64,000 nucleotides of DNA from Podarcis bocagei (taxonomy: Eukaryota): NCBI GenBank assembly GCA_964188305.1, contig OZ076889.1. One strand, written 5' to 3'. How positions within the stretch are numbered: the stretch's first letter is position 1; each line of letters begins with the position of its first letter. Positions 187 through 57,868 of this stretch are shown here, in pieces. Below the pieces are notes generated by a model. That model was not told the DNA's origin, ran no database searches, and was given only the letters and a program-made list of their open reading frames with translations. Both the position numbers and the translations under genes were made by a program.

Positions 187-17025
<16,839 letters not shown>

Positions 17026-17439
17026 TCACCTCAGAGGAACTGACGCTACCCAGAAGCGCTTTTAGTCGTTATCGTGGCCACGTGAGACTACAATCCCCAG
17101 CATGCCAAGCGCGTTCTGAGACCGGCGTTCGGAGGGCTGGACCGTAAACTAGAACGCGGAATGAAGTAGTCGCAGAAACGTCGCCTGGAAACGGCCTTTT
17201 TTGCCTCTGTCGGTTTCAGAGATGCCCGAAAGAACAGACGCAACGAAGAAGACCCCGAGCTTTAATAAAAATCTTAGGAACCGCCACATTGAAGGTCCTA
17301 CCGCGCCAGACGTGCAGCTCTTTCTTCCCAGCGCGCCAGACAAGACCTGGATCTTTGCTTCAGAAATGGGCATAAAGATAAATAAGAGCACTGTGGTGGA
17401 GAGTTAATGCGAGAAACGTAGCTCTTGGTTTAACTGTGG

Positions 17440-17633: not shown

Positions 17634-17784
17634 AAGAAACAGGATTTAACCATCTTTAGCAAACAGAAAATCCTTCTCTGCTCTGTAAGCCCCGAGAAAG
17701 ACAGCCTTCTTTTCACACTGGTGCTAAAACCTTTAAGAAGCAAATCCAGAAAAACCAGTCTTAATTTGAATTTTCTCACTAAGA

Positions 17785-17970
17785 TTCAGGTAGGTAGACG
17801 TGTTGGTCTGACGTAGTCGAAATAAATTAAGAAATTGTCCAGTAGCACCTTAGAGACCAACTTTGTTCCGAGTATAAGCTTTGGTGTGCATGCACACGGA
17901 AGTGTATACCCAGACCAAACTTAGTTGGTCTCGAAGATGCTACTGGACAATTTTTGAATTTATTTATTTA
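17785..17970. mobile_element. Penelope-derived inverted-repeat element
   Basis: 31-bp arms 17832-17862 / 17923-17953 (2 mismatches) with CCAGTAGCACCTTAGAGACCAAC motif; flanking direct repeat TTTCTCACTAAGA at 17772-17784 and 17971-17983. Confidence 0.7.
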
Positions 17971-20900
17971 TTTCTCACTAAGACTCCGGATAGCATTTAA
18001 CTAGTGTTTGTCAAGCTTCTCTATGTCCAGTAAGGCAAAAGAATCACATGAAACGGGTATCAAGTTCTTGTGAATAGAGGAGATAAGATTAAGAGCCACT
18101 GTAGGCTGTGTGCCTCCTGCAGCCTTGTCACGTTAGAATGCACAGAATCAGAGTTGTACCTAATCAAGTTGTACCTAATCATGCACCTAATCAAGTTGTA
18201 TTATTTGTAGAACTGTTATCAAGCGCATTAGCTAACACTAGGCAAAATCTTTATGATGCAGCGCACTCCAGATTGGAATTTTGAGTCTAGGAAAGATCAA
18301 GATTGGCAAGCATTTTCCCTGCATTAAAATAGAACAATAGTTTGTCGCAGACTGGTTTTTAAAAGGGCAGGCAGATGCCCTGGAAAAAGCTTGCAAACTA
18401 GGCATGATAGTGCTTGCCAAATATTGTGGGTGTATGGCAACAAATAGATGTAATTTTTAGGCACCAGTGCCACACCTTCTAATATCAGCTAGCTAGTAGC
18501 CGGTAAACCAGGGCTGAGGAACTAATGGCTTTCCAGCAGTGGATGGTTGAGGTGGATGGGAGATACATCTGTGGGCAAGATACCGCATCCTTGTATTTAA
18601 CAATTTAATGGCAATTAAATTCTCTATCGGCTAAATACATACTTCCAGTTATCTTTTCCTGAGAGCCCTTATGTAGCCTGGATTGTATTATCCCTGCCAG
18701 GGCTAAAGAACATCAGGAACTAAGGCTGCAGTCCTATGTACTTAGTTGGGAGTACTGTAATACACATTCAGTGCAGGACTTCTGAGTAAACATGAATAGA
18801 ATTCCACTCTAAATTGCTTGTTGTTATGGTTCTTTACCTGCTAGATTGATAAGGCAACATGCACATGTAGAGATGCTGGCCAGACAACAGTGCAAAGTTA
18901 ACCAAATGGTAAGCCTTGTTGTAAAACTAAATACAGAACATATCCAGGGTTAGTCGTCTGAATGCAGGCAGGGAGTTCTTGCATCATTTAAGCAAACAGA
19001 TGCATATTAGCACAGGAAGGCTTTTGTGTGTAGAATAAAGCAGACACTGAACATTTATAGTGTTTATTAAATTTTATCTACACATAATCAAGACACAAAC
19101 AATATTTATGGATAGCTTTAGCTCAGTTTCTAAAATTGCATTTGACCAGATCTAACCTCTGTTCAATTTATATGAAGCTCTGAAAGTTACTCAGCAAGAT
19201 AAATACATATAAAAAGGGGGAAGTTGCTTGCATTTTCTTTCATCAAGGAGATGTATAGCAGGCATTCATTTTAAGGAGCAATAAAAACATGAGGTACTCA
19301 AAGTCCATCCTTTAGTGTGCAAAGATAGTTTAAGACTACAGGATGATATTTTAAGGGACAATGAATGTATGAGACATAAACTGTTTCTAGTATCCTAAAT
19401 AATAGTTTAATATGCTATCCTGAGCTATTAACTCCTGAGTTTACATTTTAGCTTTATGTACTTCAAACACAGGATTTTGTGATTTTTACAGTTCTATGTA
19501 AAACACATTTTATAGACATACCTTAGAAAAGGAAACAGAAGGGAAACCATTCAAGTGGATGTTTCACACTTGGGGTAGAACCAAACATAGCACTAAATCT
19601 TGCACAATGGAACCTCTTCTTCCTCTCCCCACCCCATGTGTGCCCCCCTAAATGTACTCTAGAACATTTTTGGGGGAGATGCCTGTTGCACAAGCAAAAA
19701 TCCTTGTGCTAGCAGGGCATGGTAGTTGAATCCCATCCGTAGTCTTTAAAGTTGGTTGTGTCACAAGATTGTTCTCGGCTAACTGGTCTTTTTTCAAGTT
19801 TCCTAACTTGCACAAAAAAGCCTTAAGGCATTTATTTTTTACAGTTCAACGGAATATTTTTGGCAAGACAATAAAAAAATATTGTTCTTTAAAGAATTGC
19901 AAATGTCGTAGCTTTCGATACTGCCCTCTTCCAAGAAGTTGGCGTCACTATTTGACACCATTTCCATAAAATAGTCTAAATTCAGCTTCAATTTAGAAAT
20001 GGTTTATAAACTATTAAAAAAAAAAATCTTTTCCTCAGCTATCTCCAGTCTTGCCGCCTAGATAGTTGTTACAGGAATAAGTAGGAGGAATACCCCTCAC
20101 TGTACATATATAAATAGGTTTTTATTAGGAAGACATTTAAGATGGCTAACTTCACAAGAATGTCAGCTATCTATATGTTTTGTCTTGGCACAGTGGTCCT
20201 AAATTTGTGGAGTGCTAGAAATTGCATTGTTCTATGCTACCCTCTCATATGCCACTATGAGAGAGATGACTCAAAGTTCAGACCATTGCTTTCACTTCAG
20301 CTTCTTTGCCCTAGCCTAATATTTGCCTGAAGATACACATGTGGTTAACTGCTATTTTCGCAATTTTCTGGAAGTGGATCCATAGCAAACAGGTTTTTTA
20401 AAAATCTTCTTGCAGTAAGCATTTTTTTAAAAAAATCATGTTGTGCAGTAATAGATGAAGTTGGTATGGACTGACAATAAGAAAGTGAAGTTATAGTTTC
20501 TGATACTACAAAGAAAATTAGACATTGTTGCTCTGTAGATTTTTTAAAATGTTTATTATTTTGTAAAACTCTTGTAACTCAGGCAACAGCCTCTAATGCA
20601 GAACAGAACTTCAATGAGACTGCTTCTTACTGGCAAATTAGGCTTGAGTATAAAAATGCTGTCAGCAAACAACTTGAGTTGGAGAGACATGCATCCTACA
20701 TATTGCATCTCAATTAGATTTAACAAAAATACAAAATAAACTTACCTTCAATTGTTTTTTGTACTGTTCTTAAAACTATTTTAGCTGGTTTTATGGTATA
20801 GTTGTAAATTGCCTTAAGGCATATGCAAACAGCAATTCATTGATGAATAAATAATAACCTGGTCCAAATGTGCTCATACATTCCAATTGAATTACGGGGA

Positions 20901-22457: not shown

Positions 22458-53766
<31,309 letters not shown>

Positions 53767-54055
53767 ACCGCCGCGCCCCTGAGGAGAGCAGCAGCAAAGG
53801 CGAGGGAGAACCTCGGCGGGGCTGGGGGGGCGGGGAGGAAGCGCGAGGCGGGAGGAAAGGCAGCAGCGGGTGCGGATGAGGCGCCACTAGGCGGGCTGAG
53901 GGCCGCGGCTGCTGCCGCCACCGCGCGCCAAACGCGCACGCAACGACGTTCTCTCGCGCGGAGAGCGGCGCCTGCGAGGATCCCGCCGGAACCGGTTCTC
54001 GGAGAGCGCCCCCTGCAGCACGGATGGAAGCATCGCATCCTTAGGCTGACAACTT

Positions 54056-55083
54056 TTACTTTTTTAAAAAAAAAAATTGGAGTCCTTTATTACAGATCAG
54101 GCAGGTTAAAAAGGTAGACTATGTAAAGCAGAAGACTGAAAGAAAAATGTACCCATTTAACCGTTTCAAAAAACCATGTACGGAAAGAAGCTGAAGGAAA
54201 ACACCCGAGAAGAGGCAGGTGTACCACCGTTCCCATTCTACGCTGGGCTGGTGGAGCCATTTCTCTTGCTGGTCTGCTAAAGAGAAATGTTGACAGCATG
54301 CCATCTCATTCTGCTGGTACTTAATGGGACAGGCTGGCGTGGGTCAGAGGCACCATCATGACAAACCAGAAAGTGCTGGATGAAAAGTGACTCATGGTCA
54401 ATGGTGACAGAAATGCCATGCCATGGAATGGCAGGAAGTTGCTGTTTCTGCAGTTACAAGAAAGATAGCAGTGAGCCACACCAAATTCCTGCTTAGCTTT
54501 GCAGACAGCAGGGCTGCTGGACTGGCTGATACAAGTGAAGGACAAAATCTAGGTGTTCATCAGAATTTAGTAAAACCCCATTTTCAGTGGCAAGGCATGG
54601 TTTCCAGTCCTAAAGGTTCAGCAAGGTCAAATCAGGAGAATTTCCCATCCATCATGTAGTAGCCATACATCAGTCCCAACACTATGGCTCCCCAAACAGG
54701 ATCAGATGGACTGTCCAGAAACTTCATTCTTTCGAGGGAGACTTGTTTGGAACCTTGGAGACATTAGGATTACTGTCATACGGATGAACCTCTCCTATAA
54801 GGCATTGGTCAAGCATCTCTCGGGCATCCAAAGAGTGGCCAACATCTTCAAAGTTCTCAGTGGCATCTCTACCAGCTTGTTTGAGCAGAATCTCCTCTCC
54901 ACCTGGATGCTCACTGAGGAAGCGGGTGACGTCATAGACACACCCACTGATGACCAGTTTCCTAGTTGGTGTTTCGCTTCACCACTTTGTCCAGGGTGAA
55001 GACCCCTTTTGCGGGTCTCCAGCATGTCCCCGCTACCATGCTACTTTCTTGACCCCATTCAGGCTCGCCCACCTTGACCGAAC
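54056..55083 (-). pseudogene. CYB5B: Processed (retro) pseudogene of cytochrome b5 type B, with 5'UTR, disrupted CDS (~55058-54632), 3'UTR and A-tail remnant
   Basis: Minus strand, intronless: ..[73 protein letters not shown]...*SFWTVHLI/GAIVLGLMYGYYMMDGKFS*; stops at 54962-54964 and 54724-54726 plus frameshifts; AATAAA at 54086-54091; flanking AGGCTGAC repeat at 54043-54050 and 55084-55091. Confidence 0.9.
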
Positions 55084-57868
55084 AGGCTGACTTTTGAAAT
55101 AAAAAAATGGGACAGTGGGATCCATCCATTTTTGGCTGGCTTAGGGGTCCAGCTCAATAGCTTTTGCTGGAAATAGGGATGGGCACCATTATTGCTGGAC
55201 AGGGATGGGCAGATACAATACAAAAATTGACTGTTTGCCTACATCTTGAAGCAGGGGGTGGGGAATGTTTGGCTCTTGCTGGACTACAACTTCCTTCACC
55301 CCTTGACCATTGGTTATGCTGGCTGGGAATGGTGGGAGTTGGAGTCCAACGAAGATCACATGTTCCTCCCTACTGGTTATTGCTTTGTTTGTTGATGAGA
55401 ATGAGGATGATTATGATGTGTTTTTTGTTTTCATTTTGTATGTTGCAAACGGCCCTGTGATCGTCAGATGAAGGGTGGTATACAAATTTAATCAATAAAA
55501 GTTAAAATAAATAACAAGACAAAAGACAGGGAGGAGAAATGACCTTGCTTCTTGACTGTGGAGGGACTATACCAACTTATTTCTGACCAATTAGGGAACC
55601 TTGATTGAAATGGGCTTACTCTCATGTGTGCTTAGAATTACATTCTTTACATTCATTCTGATTTGGTCTGGCCATTGCAAAGCTCTGGACAGTCAGCTGA
55701 GCAGTGGTAAAATGTGGAGATGTACTGAAGGGGCATCTGAAAGGACTGCAAGCTCCCACTGTCTGGATATTAGGGTAATCAGAGCTCCTTCTCTGGGTGT
55801 CCCTGATATCAGTTAGGTGGGTGGGGACCAGAAAAAAAATTTCTTCAAGATGGCACATGGTTGTATACATGTCATGGGCCCCTGCTGGATAGCATGCATG
55901 ATTGCTATTAATGAGTAGGCATCACTGTGCATACACAATCTTGTGTCTCTAAAAAAACCCAAGCATTTTTTTCCTCATTGCCACCATCAGAATTAAAATG
56001 CCCTCCCACTCACCCATCCTTCTCAGTAGTGAGCTATGTAGCTAAAAGCAAGCAGAGCTGTAGCTTGGCATCATTCTCTTGGCTGTACTTCAAATAGTGG
56101 TGAGGCAGTAAAGAGAGGGATTGCTGAAAGCCCAATAAGGGCTGCTTTCTTAAGCCAACTGCTCATACAGCCCTGGAAGAACAGGAGAACTGAAGGGCTA
56201 CACTGTGTTGCCACAGCTGACTTCCCTTATATGGATTGGATGAGTGCTATGGAGGATACAAAATACAAAGGCTGCACCAAGAGGCCCTAAGAATTGACCA
56301 GAATTTGGTTGCATTTATAAATTTTATGCCTGTCCTTGTCTCTTGTCTGCTCATTTATTTTGTACTGTGTGTTTTTTATTGTACATTGCCTTGTAATTTC
56401 AAATTGAAGTTGATATATAAATATAATGATGATGATGAGAGGGGACTTTTATTAATCAGAGCTGAAAAGGAAAAAAAAAATACTTGCAACTTCTACATGC
56501 CTGGAGGGCTTGCCTAAACAAAAGATGTTTCAAACAGGCACCATTAAGATTACAGTGGAAGTGCCTACTACCTGACCTCATTCACAGGAAGTTCCACAGT
56601 GTACATGCTGCCACACTAAAAGACAGATTTATTACAAGTGCAGAACAAGTATTATGTGGCACCTGTAACAAATGTCCTGCAGCATCAATACATAGCAAAG
56701 TTATTTTTCCTCCACCCCCCAATTGTATGCTGAAGCAAACTGCTGAATGGCTTGCAACGCTTTTCTTAAGAGTGGCTGAAATGCATTTAATTAATCATGC
56801 AAAAACCACAGACAAAAATGTGTGGATTTTTCACAAATCCAACATGTCCTATAAATATCCCATTGTCTGTCTTGCAGATGGATGCATGAAACCACAAGCA
56901 TGGTCTGACTATAGGCATCTTTCTTTTGAACTAGCACATTCTGAGGTAAAGTTGGGTTGCAGCCAGAATTAAATATGCCAGTTCAGATCTCATGAGCAGG
57001 CAGTAGTGAGACATGTGTCATGCCAGTGAAGTGCATGACAGAGCCTATAAACATCCAGATGATCAGAGACATTATTATTTCTGGCCTATTACCAATACAG
57101 TATTTGTACTAACCCAATTTCATTGTTGCTATTTTAAGACAAAGCTCCCTAACTGGCTTTGTTGTGCAACGGCTTTCACTAAAGAGAATGCCTGAGAGGA
57201 CGCTTTGCATAGATCAACACGGTGACAATTTAAATGTTTCCAGCACTGGCTTGTTACATCAGCACCCATGTGTTCTAGAGTAAATGCTTGAGAACACTGC
57301 TTTGCATAGACCGGCATGGTGACAAAACAATCCTATTTAAGTGCTTCCATATGAAAGATCAGAGTTTTCTTATACCAGGATCCTTGTGTTCTAGATCTGA
57401 TTCTGTCAAAATGATGGCAATCTCTCTGTAATAACCTCACTATTGTACAGGGAACCAACTAGACCACTGTATGTAACCCAATTTCATGCTGGCTGTGCAG
57501 TGGTGATATGATAAAGTCTGGTTTTTTGTTTCCTTCCCACAATGCAGTGCTTTCGAAGCTGAGGGCCTTTGCAGGAACCTGGCAAAACAATGTAATATTG
57601 GCCACTCTTTCTCCCACTCCCATACAATAGGTGCTCCCCTCTCCCCAAAATAAAAACACTGTCATAGGCCAATAATGTTTTTACCTTTAAACATGCATCT
57701 CTCATAAGGGGAAAAGGCTGGCAGCACTGGCTCCAAGGTAACATTGTCGATTGAAATGAGATGTTTATTGGTCTGAAGAGGGTACATTTCTGAAAATCTT
57801 AGGGCTGAACAGTCTACAAAACTTTTGTTACTACTCTATTGATGCTGCTACTTTGTGTTCTCATGGCA

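What the first reader, a model, noticed from the sequence alone, without database searches (positions are those of the whole stretch)
54043..55095. Hidden full-length CYB5B retrocopy inserted at the edge of the IPO9 promoter
Seen: an intronless cytochrome b5 sequence on the minus strand that the ORF track misses. It keeps both heme-ligand motifs (HPGG, His at 54907-54909; GHS, His at 54835-54837) and the C-terminal membrane tail (GAIVLGLMYGYYMMDGKFS*), but is broken by two stops and frameshifts. It is followed by ~550 nt of 3'UTR, AATAAA (54086-54091) and a decayed A-tail (~54053-54065). AGGCTGAC flanks both sides, and the right copy continues TTTT/GAAA, resembling an L1 endonuclease site. Knowledge: the VAKRN-like N-terminus and YDVTRFL best match mitochondrial CYB5B; processed pseudogenes are generally considered scarcer outside mammals. 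Inference: an L1-mobilised mRNA landed ~290 bp upstream of the IPO9 ATG in the same orientation. It displaced the upstream promoter flank by ~1 kb, placed a poly(A) signal just ahead of the IPO9 TSS, and could be transcribed antisense by divergent CpG-island transcription.
Basis: partly seen in the sequence, partly recalled or inferred. Interest (0 to 1): 0.72.

Follow-up and report, generated by a model that had tools for sequence, protein, structure and literature searches.

The report
Dead CYB5B retrocopy beside IPO9 promoter
A broken, intron-less copy of the lizard's mitochondrial-type cytochrome b5 gene (CYB5B) was reverse-transcribed into the DNA just upstream of the IPO9 gene before wall lizards and sand lizards split; it is real but an ordinary processed pseudogene.

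Summary
Window 55083-54058 (minus strand) is a processed pseudogene of CYB5B. It matches all five exons of the Lacerta agilis and Zootoca CYB5B genes in order, without the four GT-AG introns. It carries 24 nt of 5'UTR, the whole coding region and about 557 nt of 3'UTR, and ends at the parental poly(A) site. A short A-rich tail follows.

The target-site duplication is 15 bp, not 8. The L. agilis ortholog shows both copies of AAAAGTTGTCAGCCT. The nick site reads TTTT/GAAA.

It lies 276 bp upstream of the IPO9 start codon, in the same orientation, at the edge of the CpG island.

The same insertion, with the same duplication, flanks and one shared stop (codon 116), sits upstream of IPO9 in L. agilis, so it predates the Podarcis/Lacerta split. 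It evolves neutrally and has lost most of its CpGs.

RefSeq (L. agilis) and Ensembl/UniProt (P. muralis) list it as a "cytochrome b5-like" protein, probably wrongly. The scan has already found other processed retrocopies in this genome.

L1 as the mobiliser is inferred, not shown.

The parts
55084..55095 (-). 5' copy of the target-site duplication. It reads AAAAG-TCAGCCT, having lost 3 nt of the 15-mer AAAAGTTGTCAGCCT. Just upstream is TTTC, so the nicked (+) strand reads TTTT/GAAA.
   Evidence: The L. agilis ortholog keeps the full 15-mer with one mismatch.
55059..55083 (-). 5' end of the retrocopy: one extra G (55083) that is not in the parent, then 24 nt of parental 5'UTR.
   Evidence: Alignment to parental exon 1 (L003 from 2977).
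54632..55058 (-). Disabled CYB5B coding region, from ATG 55058-55056 to the original TGA 54634-54632. Stops at 55043-41, 54964-62 and 54726-24. Frameshifting deletions near 55003, 54957 and 54700. Heme-ligand His codons at 54909-07 and 54837-35.
54075..54631 (-). 3'UTR of CYB5B mRNA, part of a block 91.6% identical to the last exon of the L. agilis gene. It includes AATAAA at 54091-54086 and ends at the parental cleavage site (..CCAATT).
54058..54074 (-). Tail: nine extra T's (54074-54066), unexplained, then the A-rich remnant AAAAAAGT (54065-54058).
   Evidence: The parents have no T-run here.
54043..54057 (-). 3' copy of the target-site duplication, AAAAGTTGTCAGCCT.
53767..54042 (-). IPO9 CpG-island promoter / 5'UTR (GC 0.73, CpG o/e 1.06), directly abutting the insertion.
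53617..53766 (-). IPO9 exon 1 coding part. The ATG at 53766 is orthologous to the L. agilis IPO9 CDS start at L001:7243. The exon end is approximate.

Best explanation
A spliced, polyadenylated CYB5B mRNA was reverse-transcribed at a nick in a T-rich site (TTTT/GAAA) about 0.28 kb upstream of the IPO9 start codon. The most likely mechanism is target-primed reverse transcription by an L1-type LINE. The event left a 15-bp target-site duplication.

It happened in a common ancestor of Podarcis and Lacerta. The copy brought no promoter of its own. It lost its membrane anchor to a TGA at codon 116 before the two genera split. It then became methylated and lost its CpGs, and it has drifted neutrally since. 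In the window's wall lizard it gained two more stops and three frameshifts.

It is a dead processed pseudogene that the IPO9 promoter tolerates next to it.

Shown: retrocopy structure, parent gene, target-site duplication, orthology, decay.
Inferred: L1 as the enzyme source, germline methylation, lack of function.
For: Parent and structure
- Pfam Cyt-b5 at E=1.3e-21.
- The closest proteins are lacertid CYB5B, 91% to P0001. The PDB type B isoform scores best.
- There are five collinear blocks against the L. agilis (L003) and Zootoca (L004) CYB5B genes. They are 80-97% identical and are separated in the parents by GT-AG introns of about 0.5-7.4 kb.
- The 3' end coincides with the parental sequence 11-16 nt after AATAAA.

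Insertion marks and orthology
- In L. agilis the 15-mer duplication flanks the insert exactly; it is found twice against 0.00 expected.
- Parent and retrocopy lie on different L. agilis chromosome records, CM020423.1 and CM020421.1.
- About 12 kb around the site is syntenic with L. agilis, with IPO9 next door.

Decay and neutrality
- Of 929 comparable sites, 21 derived changes are shared, 33 are window-only and 54 are L. agilis-only. The TGA at codon 116 is among the shared ones.
- Lineage-specific nonsynonymous/synonymous ratios scaled to sites are 0.94 (window) and 0.64 (L. agilis; 13 N: 6 S against 14.7: 4.3 expected). The two parents differ by 0 nonsynonymous changes.
- Between species the retrocopy is 90.2% identical, against 93.3% for the upstream flank.
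- The exon 1 part fell from 25 CpGs to 7. CpG o/e is 0.28 in the retrocopy and 1.06 in the adjacent promoter.
Against: - No empty orthologous site was obtained.
- The A-tail is short and is preceded by nine T's that neither parent has. These T's resemble the flank outside the 5' duplication (D1).
- No L1 element is linked to the event, and no LINE ORF of at least 140 aa lies in the window.
- Pairwise dN/dS against the parent is about 0.4. However, the clearly dead window copy (0.44) and the open L. agilis copy (0.40) give the same value, so it is a CpG/dS effect rather than evidence of constraint.
- Expression was not tested.
Confidence: 0.93

Rival explanations
1. The copy is, or was, functional. 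It could be a retrogene encoding a soluble, anchor-less b5-like protein: in L. agilis the frame is open for 117 codons. Or it could be an exapted piece of the IPO9 upstream region, for example a poly(A) signal that stops upstream read-through, or a template for promoter-upstream or antisense transcripts.
For: - The L. agilis ortholog is annotated as protein-coding 'cytochrome b5-like' (P0006), with an ORF from ATG to the shared TGA.
- P. muralis has a UniProt/Ensembl model (P0002).
- The insertion has been retained next to a housekeeping promoter since before the genera split.
- The window keeps AATAAA 45 bp from the CpG island.
Against: - The window copy has 3 stops and 3 frameshifts.
- L. 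agilis has HPGG changed to HPGR, GHS changed to GHF and a 2-codon insertion. Its lineage-specific N:S ratio is not different from neutral.
- L. agilis has deleted the AATAAA region.
- Interspecies identity is lower in the retrocopy than in its flanks, and the CpGs have decayed.
- By my rough estimate (about 0.1), an open 117-codon frame is not unlikely by chance at about 9% divergence.
Confidence: 0.04
2. It is a retrocopy, but it was made by something other than L1. Candidates are another lizard LINE (CR1, L2, RTE/Bov-B) or a retroviral/LTR reverse transcriptase.
For: - Lizards carry many LINE clades.
- The tail is atypical: T-run, then a short A-run.
- No L1 was identified at the site.
Against: - The 15-bp duplication begins with AAAA, the nick site is TTTT/GAAA, and the copy ends at the mRNA poly(A) site followed by an A-rich remnant. 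These are the marks of L1-type priming on poly(A).
- From general knowledge, CR1, L2 and RTE recognise their own 3' ends and rarely copy mRNAs.
- Across non-mammalian chordates, retrocopy numbers correlate with L1 copy number and with no other LINE type (PMC3136929).
Confidence: 0.1
3. It is not a CYB5B retrocopy at all. It would instead be a CYB5A derivative, a DNA-level duplicate that lost its introns, or cDNA contamination or an assembly artefact.
For: None found. NCBI names the parent simply 'cytochrome b5'.
Against: - The nucleotide match to the CYB5B-type locus includes the 3'UTR at about 92%.
- Type B structures score best.
- The same insert, with the same flanks and duplication, is present in an independent assembly of another genus.
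Confidence: 0.01

Closest known systems
LINE-1-type processed pseudogenes (retrocopies) of vertebrates, including the 404 retrocopies reported for Anolis carolinensis (PMC3136929)
   Same: Intron-less; collinear with the spliced mRNA; ends at the poly(A) site with an A-rich tail; 15-bp target-site duplication; T-rich nick site; no own promoter; disabled and drifting.
   Different: Nothing essential. The tail has an odd T-run, and the landing site is unusually close (under 0.3 kb) to a housekeeping gene's start codon.
RefSeq 'cytochrome b5-like' of Lacerta agilis (P0006, locus L001:6001-6354) and the Podarcis muralis UniProt model P0002
   Same: L. agilis: the orthologous insertion, with the same flanks, the same duplication, IPO9 next door and the shared TGA at codon 116. 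P. muralis: the model shares the Podarcis-lineage substitutions and reading-frame jumps of the window copy.
   Different: They are filed as protein-coding. The L. agilis frame is still open to codon 117, whereas the window copy has two more stops and three frameshifts. The genomic place of P0002 could not be checked because it has no contig on record.
Zootoca vivipara 'cytochrome b5-like' (P0003, L002)
   Same: Also an intron-less CYB5B copy, 93% identical to the L. agilis parent and 82% to the window copy.
   Different: Different locus with no IPO9. It starts about 20 nt further 5', shares few derived changes and loses homology abruptly inside the 3'UTR. It is an independent retroposition event.
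CYB5B, the outer-mitochondrial-membrane cytochrome b5 (parent gene; P0001, L003/L004)
   Same: Heme-binding fold motifs HPGG and GHS, the tail-anchor sequence and the 3'UTR are all recognisable.
   Different: The parent has 5 exons over about 15 kb and shows zero amino-acid changes between Lacerta and Zootoca. The copy is broken and intron-less.

Membership tests
Processed pseudogene (LINE-mediated retrocopy) | Collinear with the spliced parental mRNA across exon-exon junctions; all introns absent | tested here: met
   Five exon blocks of L003/L004 map contiguously onto window 55082-54075. The four parental introns have GT-AG ends.
Processed pseudogene (LINE-mediated retrocopy) | Ends at the parental polyadenylation site, followed by an A-rich tail not encoded in the parent gene | tested here: met
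   The parental match stops at ..AATAAAGGACTC(TC)CAATT, and AAAAAAGT follows. Nine extra T's intervene and are unexplained.
Processed pseudogene (LINE-mediated retrocopy) | Flanking target-site duplication at the exact borders of the insert | tested here: met
   Exact 8 bp in the window. A 15-mer occurs twice in L. agilis against 0.00 expected.
Processed pseudogene (LINE-mediated retrocopy) | Lies at a locus unlinked to the parent gene | tested here: met
   In L. agilis the retrocopy is on CM020421.1 and the parent on CM020423.1.
Processed pseudogene (LINE-mediated retrocopy) | Empty (pre-insertion) site in an outgroup species | not tested
   The only orthologous locus obtained (L. agilis) is filled.
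Processed pseudogene (LINE-mediated retrocopy) | Disabled and evolving without constraint | tested here: met
   3 stops and 3 frameshifts. Lineage N/S ratios are 0.94 and 0.64, not different from neutral. Identity is lower than in the flanks.
L1-mobilised insertion specifically | Nick-site consensus TTTT/AA-like, and a duplication of about 7-20 bp beginning with A's | tested here: met
   TTTT/GAAA on the + strand at 55092-55099. The 15-bp duplication starts AAAAG. This is consistent with L1 but not exclusive to it.
L1-mobilised insertion specifically | Active L1 present in the lineage at the time of insertion | not testable with these tools
No genome-wide repeat data were available for this species.
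CYB5B (type B) rather than CYB5A origin | Best match to type B orthologues at protein and nucleotide level, including the UTR | tested here: met
Functional retrogene | Intact reading frame, purifying selection and expression | tested here: not met
   The frame is broken in the window. There is no excess of synonymous change on either lineage. Expression is untested.

The most novel reading that the evidence does not exclude
The retrocopy is not inert. Lodged at the upstream edge of the IPO9 CpG island for tens of millions of years, it could act as a boundary: its poly(A) signal could stop upstream read-through, or it could be the template of promoter-upstream transcripts. In Lacerta, its still-open 117-codon frame could yield a soluble, anchor-less b5-like protein.
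Probability: 0.04. Interest if true: 0.4.

Novelty: new member of a known kind. Interest (0 to 1): 0.12.

Why it matters
Mostly housekeeping value.
- It shows that the "cytochrome b5-like" gene models of L. agilis (RefSeq) and P. muralis (Ensembl/UniProt) upstream of IPO9 are most likely mis-annotated processed pseudogenes.
- It is a clean, datable retroposition marker with a 15-bp duplication and one shared disabling stop. Its presence or absence at IPO9 could help order the rapid radiation of lacertid genera.
- It is an example of a CpG-island promoter tolerating a 1-kb insertion within about 0.28 kb of the start codon, while the insert itself was not absorbed into the unmethylated island.
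- Together with a second, independent CYB5B retrocopy in Zootoca and other retrocopies already noted in this genome, it adds to the evidence that lizards make processed pseudogenes routinely.

Tried and rejected
- Exact-product look-ups found nothing on record for P0014 (the P. raffonei parent isoform), the window's IPO9 exon-1 ORF or the 76-aa retrocopy ORF.
- The large representative protein search was not used.
- I could not reach IPO9 loci of other species. The word search cannot return a 1036-aa protein from a single-exon query, and I did not build a joined IPO9 model.
Parental exons were added to the alignment as separate fragments, then laid in one row in the script, which one search printed, to count columns and parental codons.
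- Considered and rejected: CYB5A origin; assembly or cDNA artefact, given the ortholog in another genus; and a roughly 30-nt duplication with no poly(A). The last is suggested by repeat D1, but the parental match runs through ..CCAATT and L. agilis defines a 15-mer.
- My first idea that the window and Zootoca copies start at the same parental base was wrong. Zootoca's copy starts about 20 nt further 5'.
- Rfam and tandem-repeat scans of the region found nothing.
- Pairwise dN/dS of about 0.4 was rejected as evidence of constraint, because the dead copy gives the same value.
Full report
**What is there**

On the minus strand between 55095 and 54043 the window holds a cytochrome b5 sequence with no introns. 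Three-frame translation shows the b5 motifs spread over shifting frames. The longest open piece is 54978-54727, 84 codons. It contains HPGG and GHS and matches Pfam Cyt-b5 (PF00173) at E=1.3e-21.

**Which gene it comes from**

The word search with the open piece returned only CYB5B-type proteins near the top. The best is P0001, at 91% identity, the 146-aa protein shared by Lacerta agilis and Zootoca vivipara. It is followed by "cytochrome b5 type B" of other squamates, birds and turtles. Against solved structures, the eight best chains are type B / outer-mitochondrial-membrane b5 at 92-99 bits. Most microsomal-type (CYB5A) chains score about 84 bits or less; two unnamed b5 chains reach 89-91. 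CYB5A is therefore rejected.

**Proof that it is a retrocopy**

I fetched the parental genes with their introns: L003 from L. agilis and L004 from Zootoca. The window's minus strand from 55082 to 54075 aligns to them in five collinear blocks:
- 55082-54910: about 80% identical
- 54911-54781: about 97%
- 54787-54752: about 86%
- 54755-54722: about 97%
- 54723-54075: about 92%, containing the last coding exon and the 3'UTR

In L003 the blocks are exons at 2977-3162, 8927-9055, 9594-9620, 17066-17097 and 17699-18362. Each is bounded by GT...AG. All four introns (about 5.8, 0.5, 7.4 and 0.6 kb) are missing from the window copy.

The match begins 24 nt upstream of the parental ATG, after one extra G. 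It ends at ..AATAAAGGACTC(TC)CAATT, where the parental genomic sequence goes on differently. That is the mRNA cleavage site.

The exons were added to the alignment as separate fragments, then laid in one row in the script, which one search printed, to count columns and parental codons.

**Insertion scars**

Downstream of the parental end come nine T's that the parents lack, then AAAAAAGT, then AAAAGTTGTCAGCCT (54057-54043). At the 5' border the window reads AAAAG-TCAGCCT (55095-55084). In the L. agilis ortholog the 5' copy is the full AAAAGTTGTCAGCGT. In that locus the 15-mer, allowing one mismatch, occurs exactly twice, at the two borders of the insert, against 0.00 expected.

The duplication is therefore 15 bp, and the window's 5' copy later lost three bases. 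On the nicked strand the site reads TTTT/GAAA. A duplication of this length beginning with A's, an A-rich tail and a T-rich nick site are the marks of L1-type target-primed reverse transcription. This attribution rests on general knowledge of L1 and is an inference.

**Where it landed, and when**

The 3' duplication ends 276 bp upstream of an ATG at 53766. The exon that starts there continues as the N-terminus of importin-9.

The protein search had also returned a 117-aa "cytochrome b5-like" of L. agilis (P0006). Its locus (L001) has the b5-like ORF at 6001-6354 and, 1.2 kb downstream on the same strand, a 1036-aa gene with IPO9-specific HEAT domains. Window 61000-49000 is syntenic with L001 at 84-95% in all but one short block (79%), and the retrocopy, both duplications and the promoter align base for base. 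The insertion is therefore orthologous and predates the split of the window's lineage from Lacerta. Earlier notes call the window species a wall lizard, and the P. muralis model P0002 shares its lineage-specific changes.

Among 929 sites where both parents agree:
- 21 derived states are shared by the two orthologs (13 at parental CpGs)
- 33 are specific to the window
- 54 are specific to L. agilis

The insertion is thus roughly 1.25-1.5 times as old as the split. One shared change is TCA to TGA at codon 116, which cuts off the membrane anchor. The copy was already disabled as a tail-anchored protein in the common ancestor.

**State of the copy**

Relative to the parental frame, the window copy has:
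- TAG at codon 6 (55043-41)
- an in-frame -3 deletion (55034/33)
- a -5 deletion (55004/03)
- TAG at codon 35 (54964-62)
- a -5 deletion (54958/57)
- the shared TGA at codon 116 (54726-24)
- a -1 deletion (54701/00)

Lineage-specific nonsynonymous/synonymous ratios, scaled to sites, are 0.94 for the window and 0.64 for L. agilis (13:6 against 14.7:4.3 expected). The two parental genes differ by five synonymous and no nonsynonymous changes. Pairwise dN/dS against the parent is about 0.4 for all three retrocopies, including the plainly dead one, so it reflects CpG-driven synonymous change rather than constraint.

Between the window and L. agilis the retrocopy is 90.2% identical. That is less than the upstream flank (93.3%) and the promoter (92.2%).

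**Relation to the IPO9 promoter**

GC content falls from 0.75 to 0.40 exactly at the 3' duplication. CpG o/e is 1.06 in the 276-bp promoter/5'UTR and 0.28 in the retrocopy. The GC-rich exon 1 part of the insert has dropped from 25 CpGs in the parent to 7.

I infer that the insert was methylated in the germline and never became part of the unmethylated island. That argues against it being a strong site of divergent initiation.

In L. agilis the AATAAA region has been deleted, so it is not conserved.

**Context**

Retrocopies are fewer in lizards than in mammals but not rare. Anolis has 404 reported (217 intact, 187 pseudogenes), and across non-mammalian chordates their numbers track L1 copy number (PMC3136929). 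A recent survey likewise finds retrocopies in all vertebrate assemblies, with lower counts outside mammals (VGP preprint). This scan has already recorded two other processed retrocopies in this same genome.

Zootoca carries a second, independent CYB5B retrocopy at another locus (L002). It has different flanks, starts about 20 nt further 5' and shares few derived states.

**Verdict**

The thing itself is an ordinary, old processed pseudogene. Its small points of interest are:
- the mis-annotation as a protein-coding gene in two public annotations
- its use as a presence/absence marker in lacertids
- the unexplained T-run at the tail

**Open items**
- an empty site in an outgroup
- expression on either strand
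- the enzyme that made the copy

Noticed in passing
L002:~5948-6668 (Zootoca vivipara, OY735910.1): An independent CYB5B retrocopy at a non-IPO9 locus, annotated 'cytochrome b5-like' (P0003, 140 aa). After a 22-nt deletion in the tail-anchor region its ORF runs into the 3'UTR. It starts about 20 nt further 5' in parental coordinates, and homology ends abruptly at about 6668.
   Followed up: partly
L001:6001-6354 (L. agilis) and UniProt model P0002 (P. muralis): The ortholog of the window retrocopy is filed as a protein-coding gene. The L. agilis model has 117 aa, ends at the shared TGA and has HPGG changed to HPGR. The P. muralis model hops over the stops and frameshifts. Both are probably mis-annotated pseudogenes.
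   Followed up: partly
window 54066-54074 (minus): Nine T's lie between the parental 3' end (..CCAATT) and the A-tail remnant. Both parental genes lack them, and L. agilis has a deletion at this spot. Together with the A-run they resemble the flank just outside the 5' duplication (55092-55112). Their origin is unresolved.
   Followed up: partly
window 55083 (minus): A single extra G sits between the 5' duplication and the first parental base. It is present in both the window and L. agilis, and the parent has C there. It could be a cap-derived G of a full-length cDNA, or chance.
   Followed up: no
window ~55276-55349; also 46003-46075 and L002:10759-10823: A SINE-like dispersed repeat lies just upstream of the retrocopy.
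   Followed up: partly
window 7970-8398 (minus): An ORF with Kelch repeats (Pfam Kelch_1/Kelch_6, E about 1e-9 to 1e-10). It is probably an exon of another gene beyond the 3' end of IPO9.
   Followed up: no
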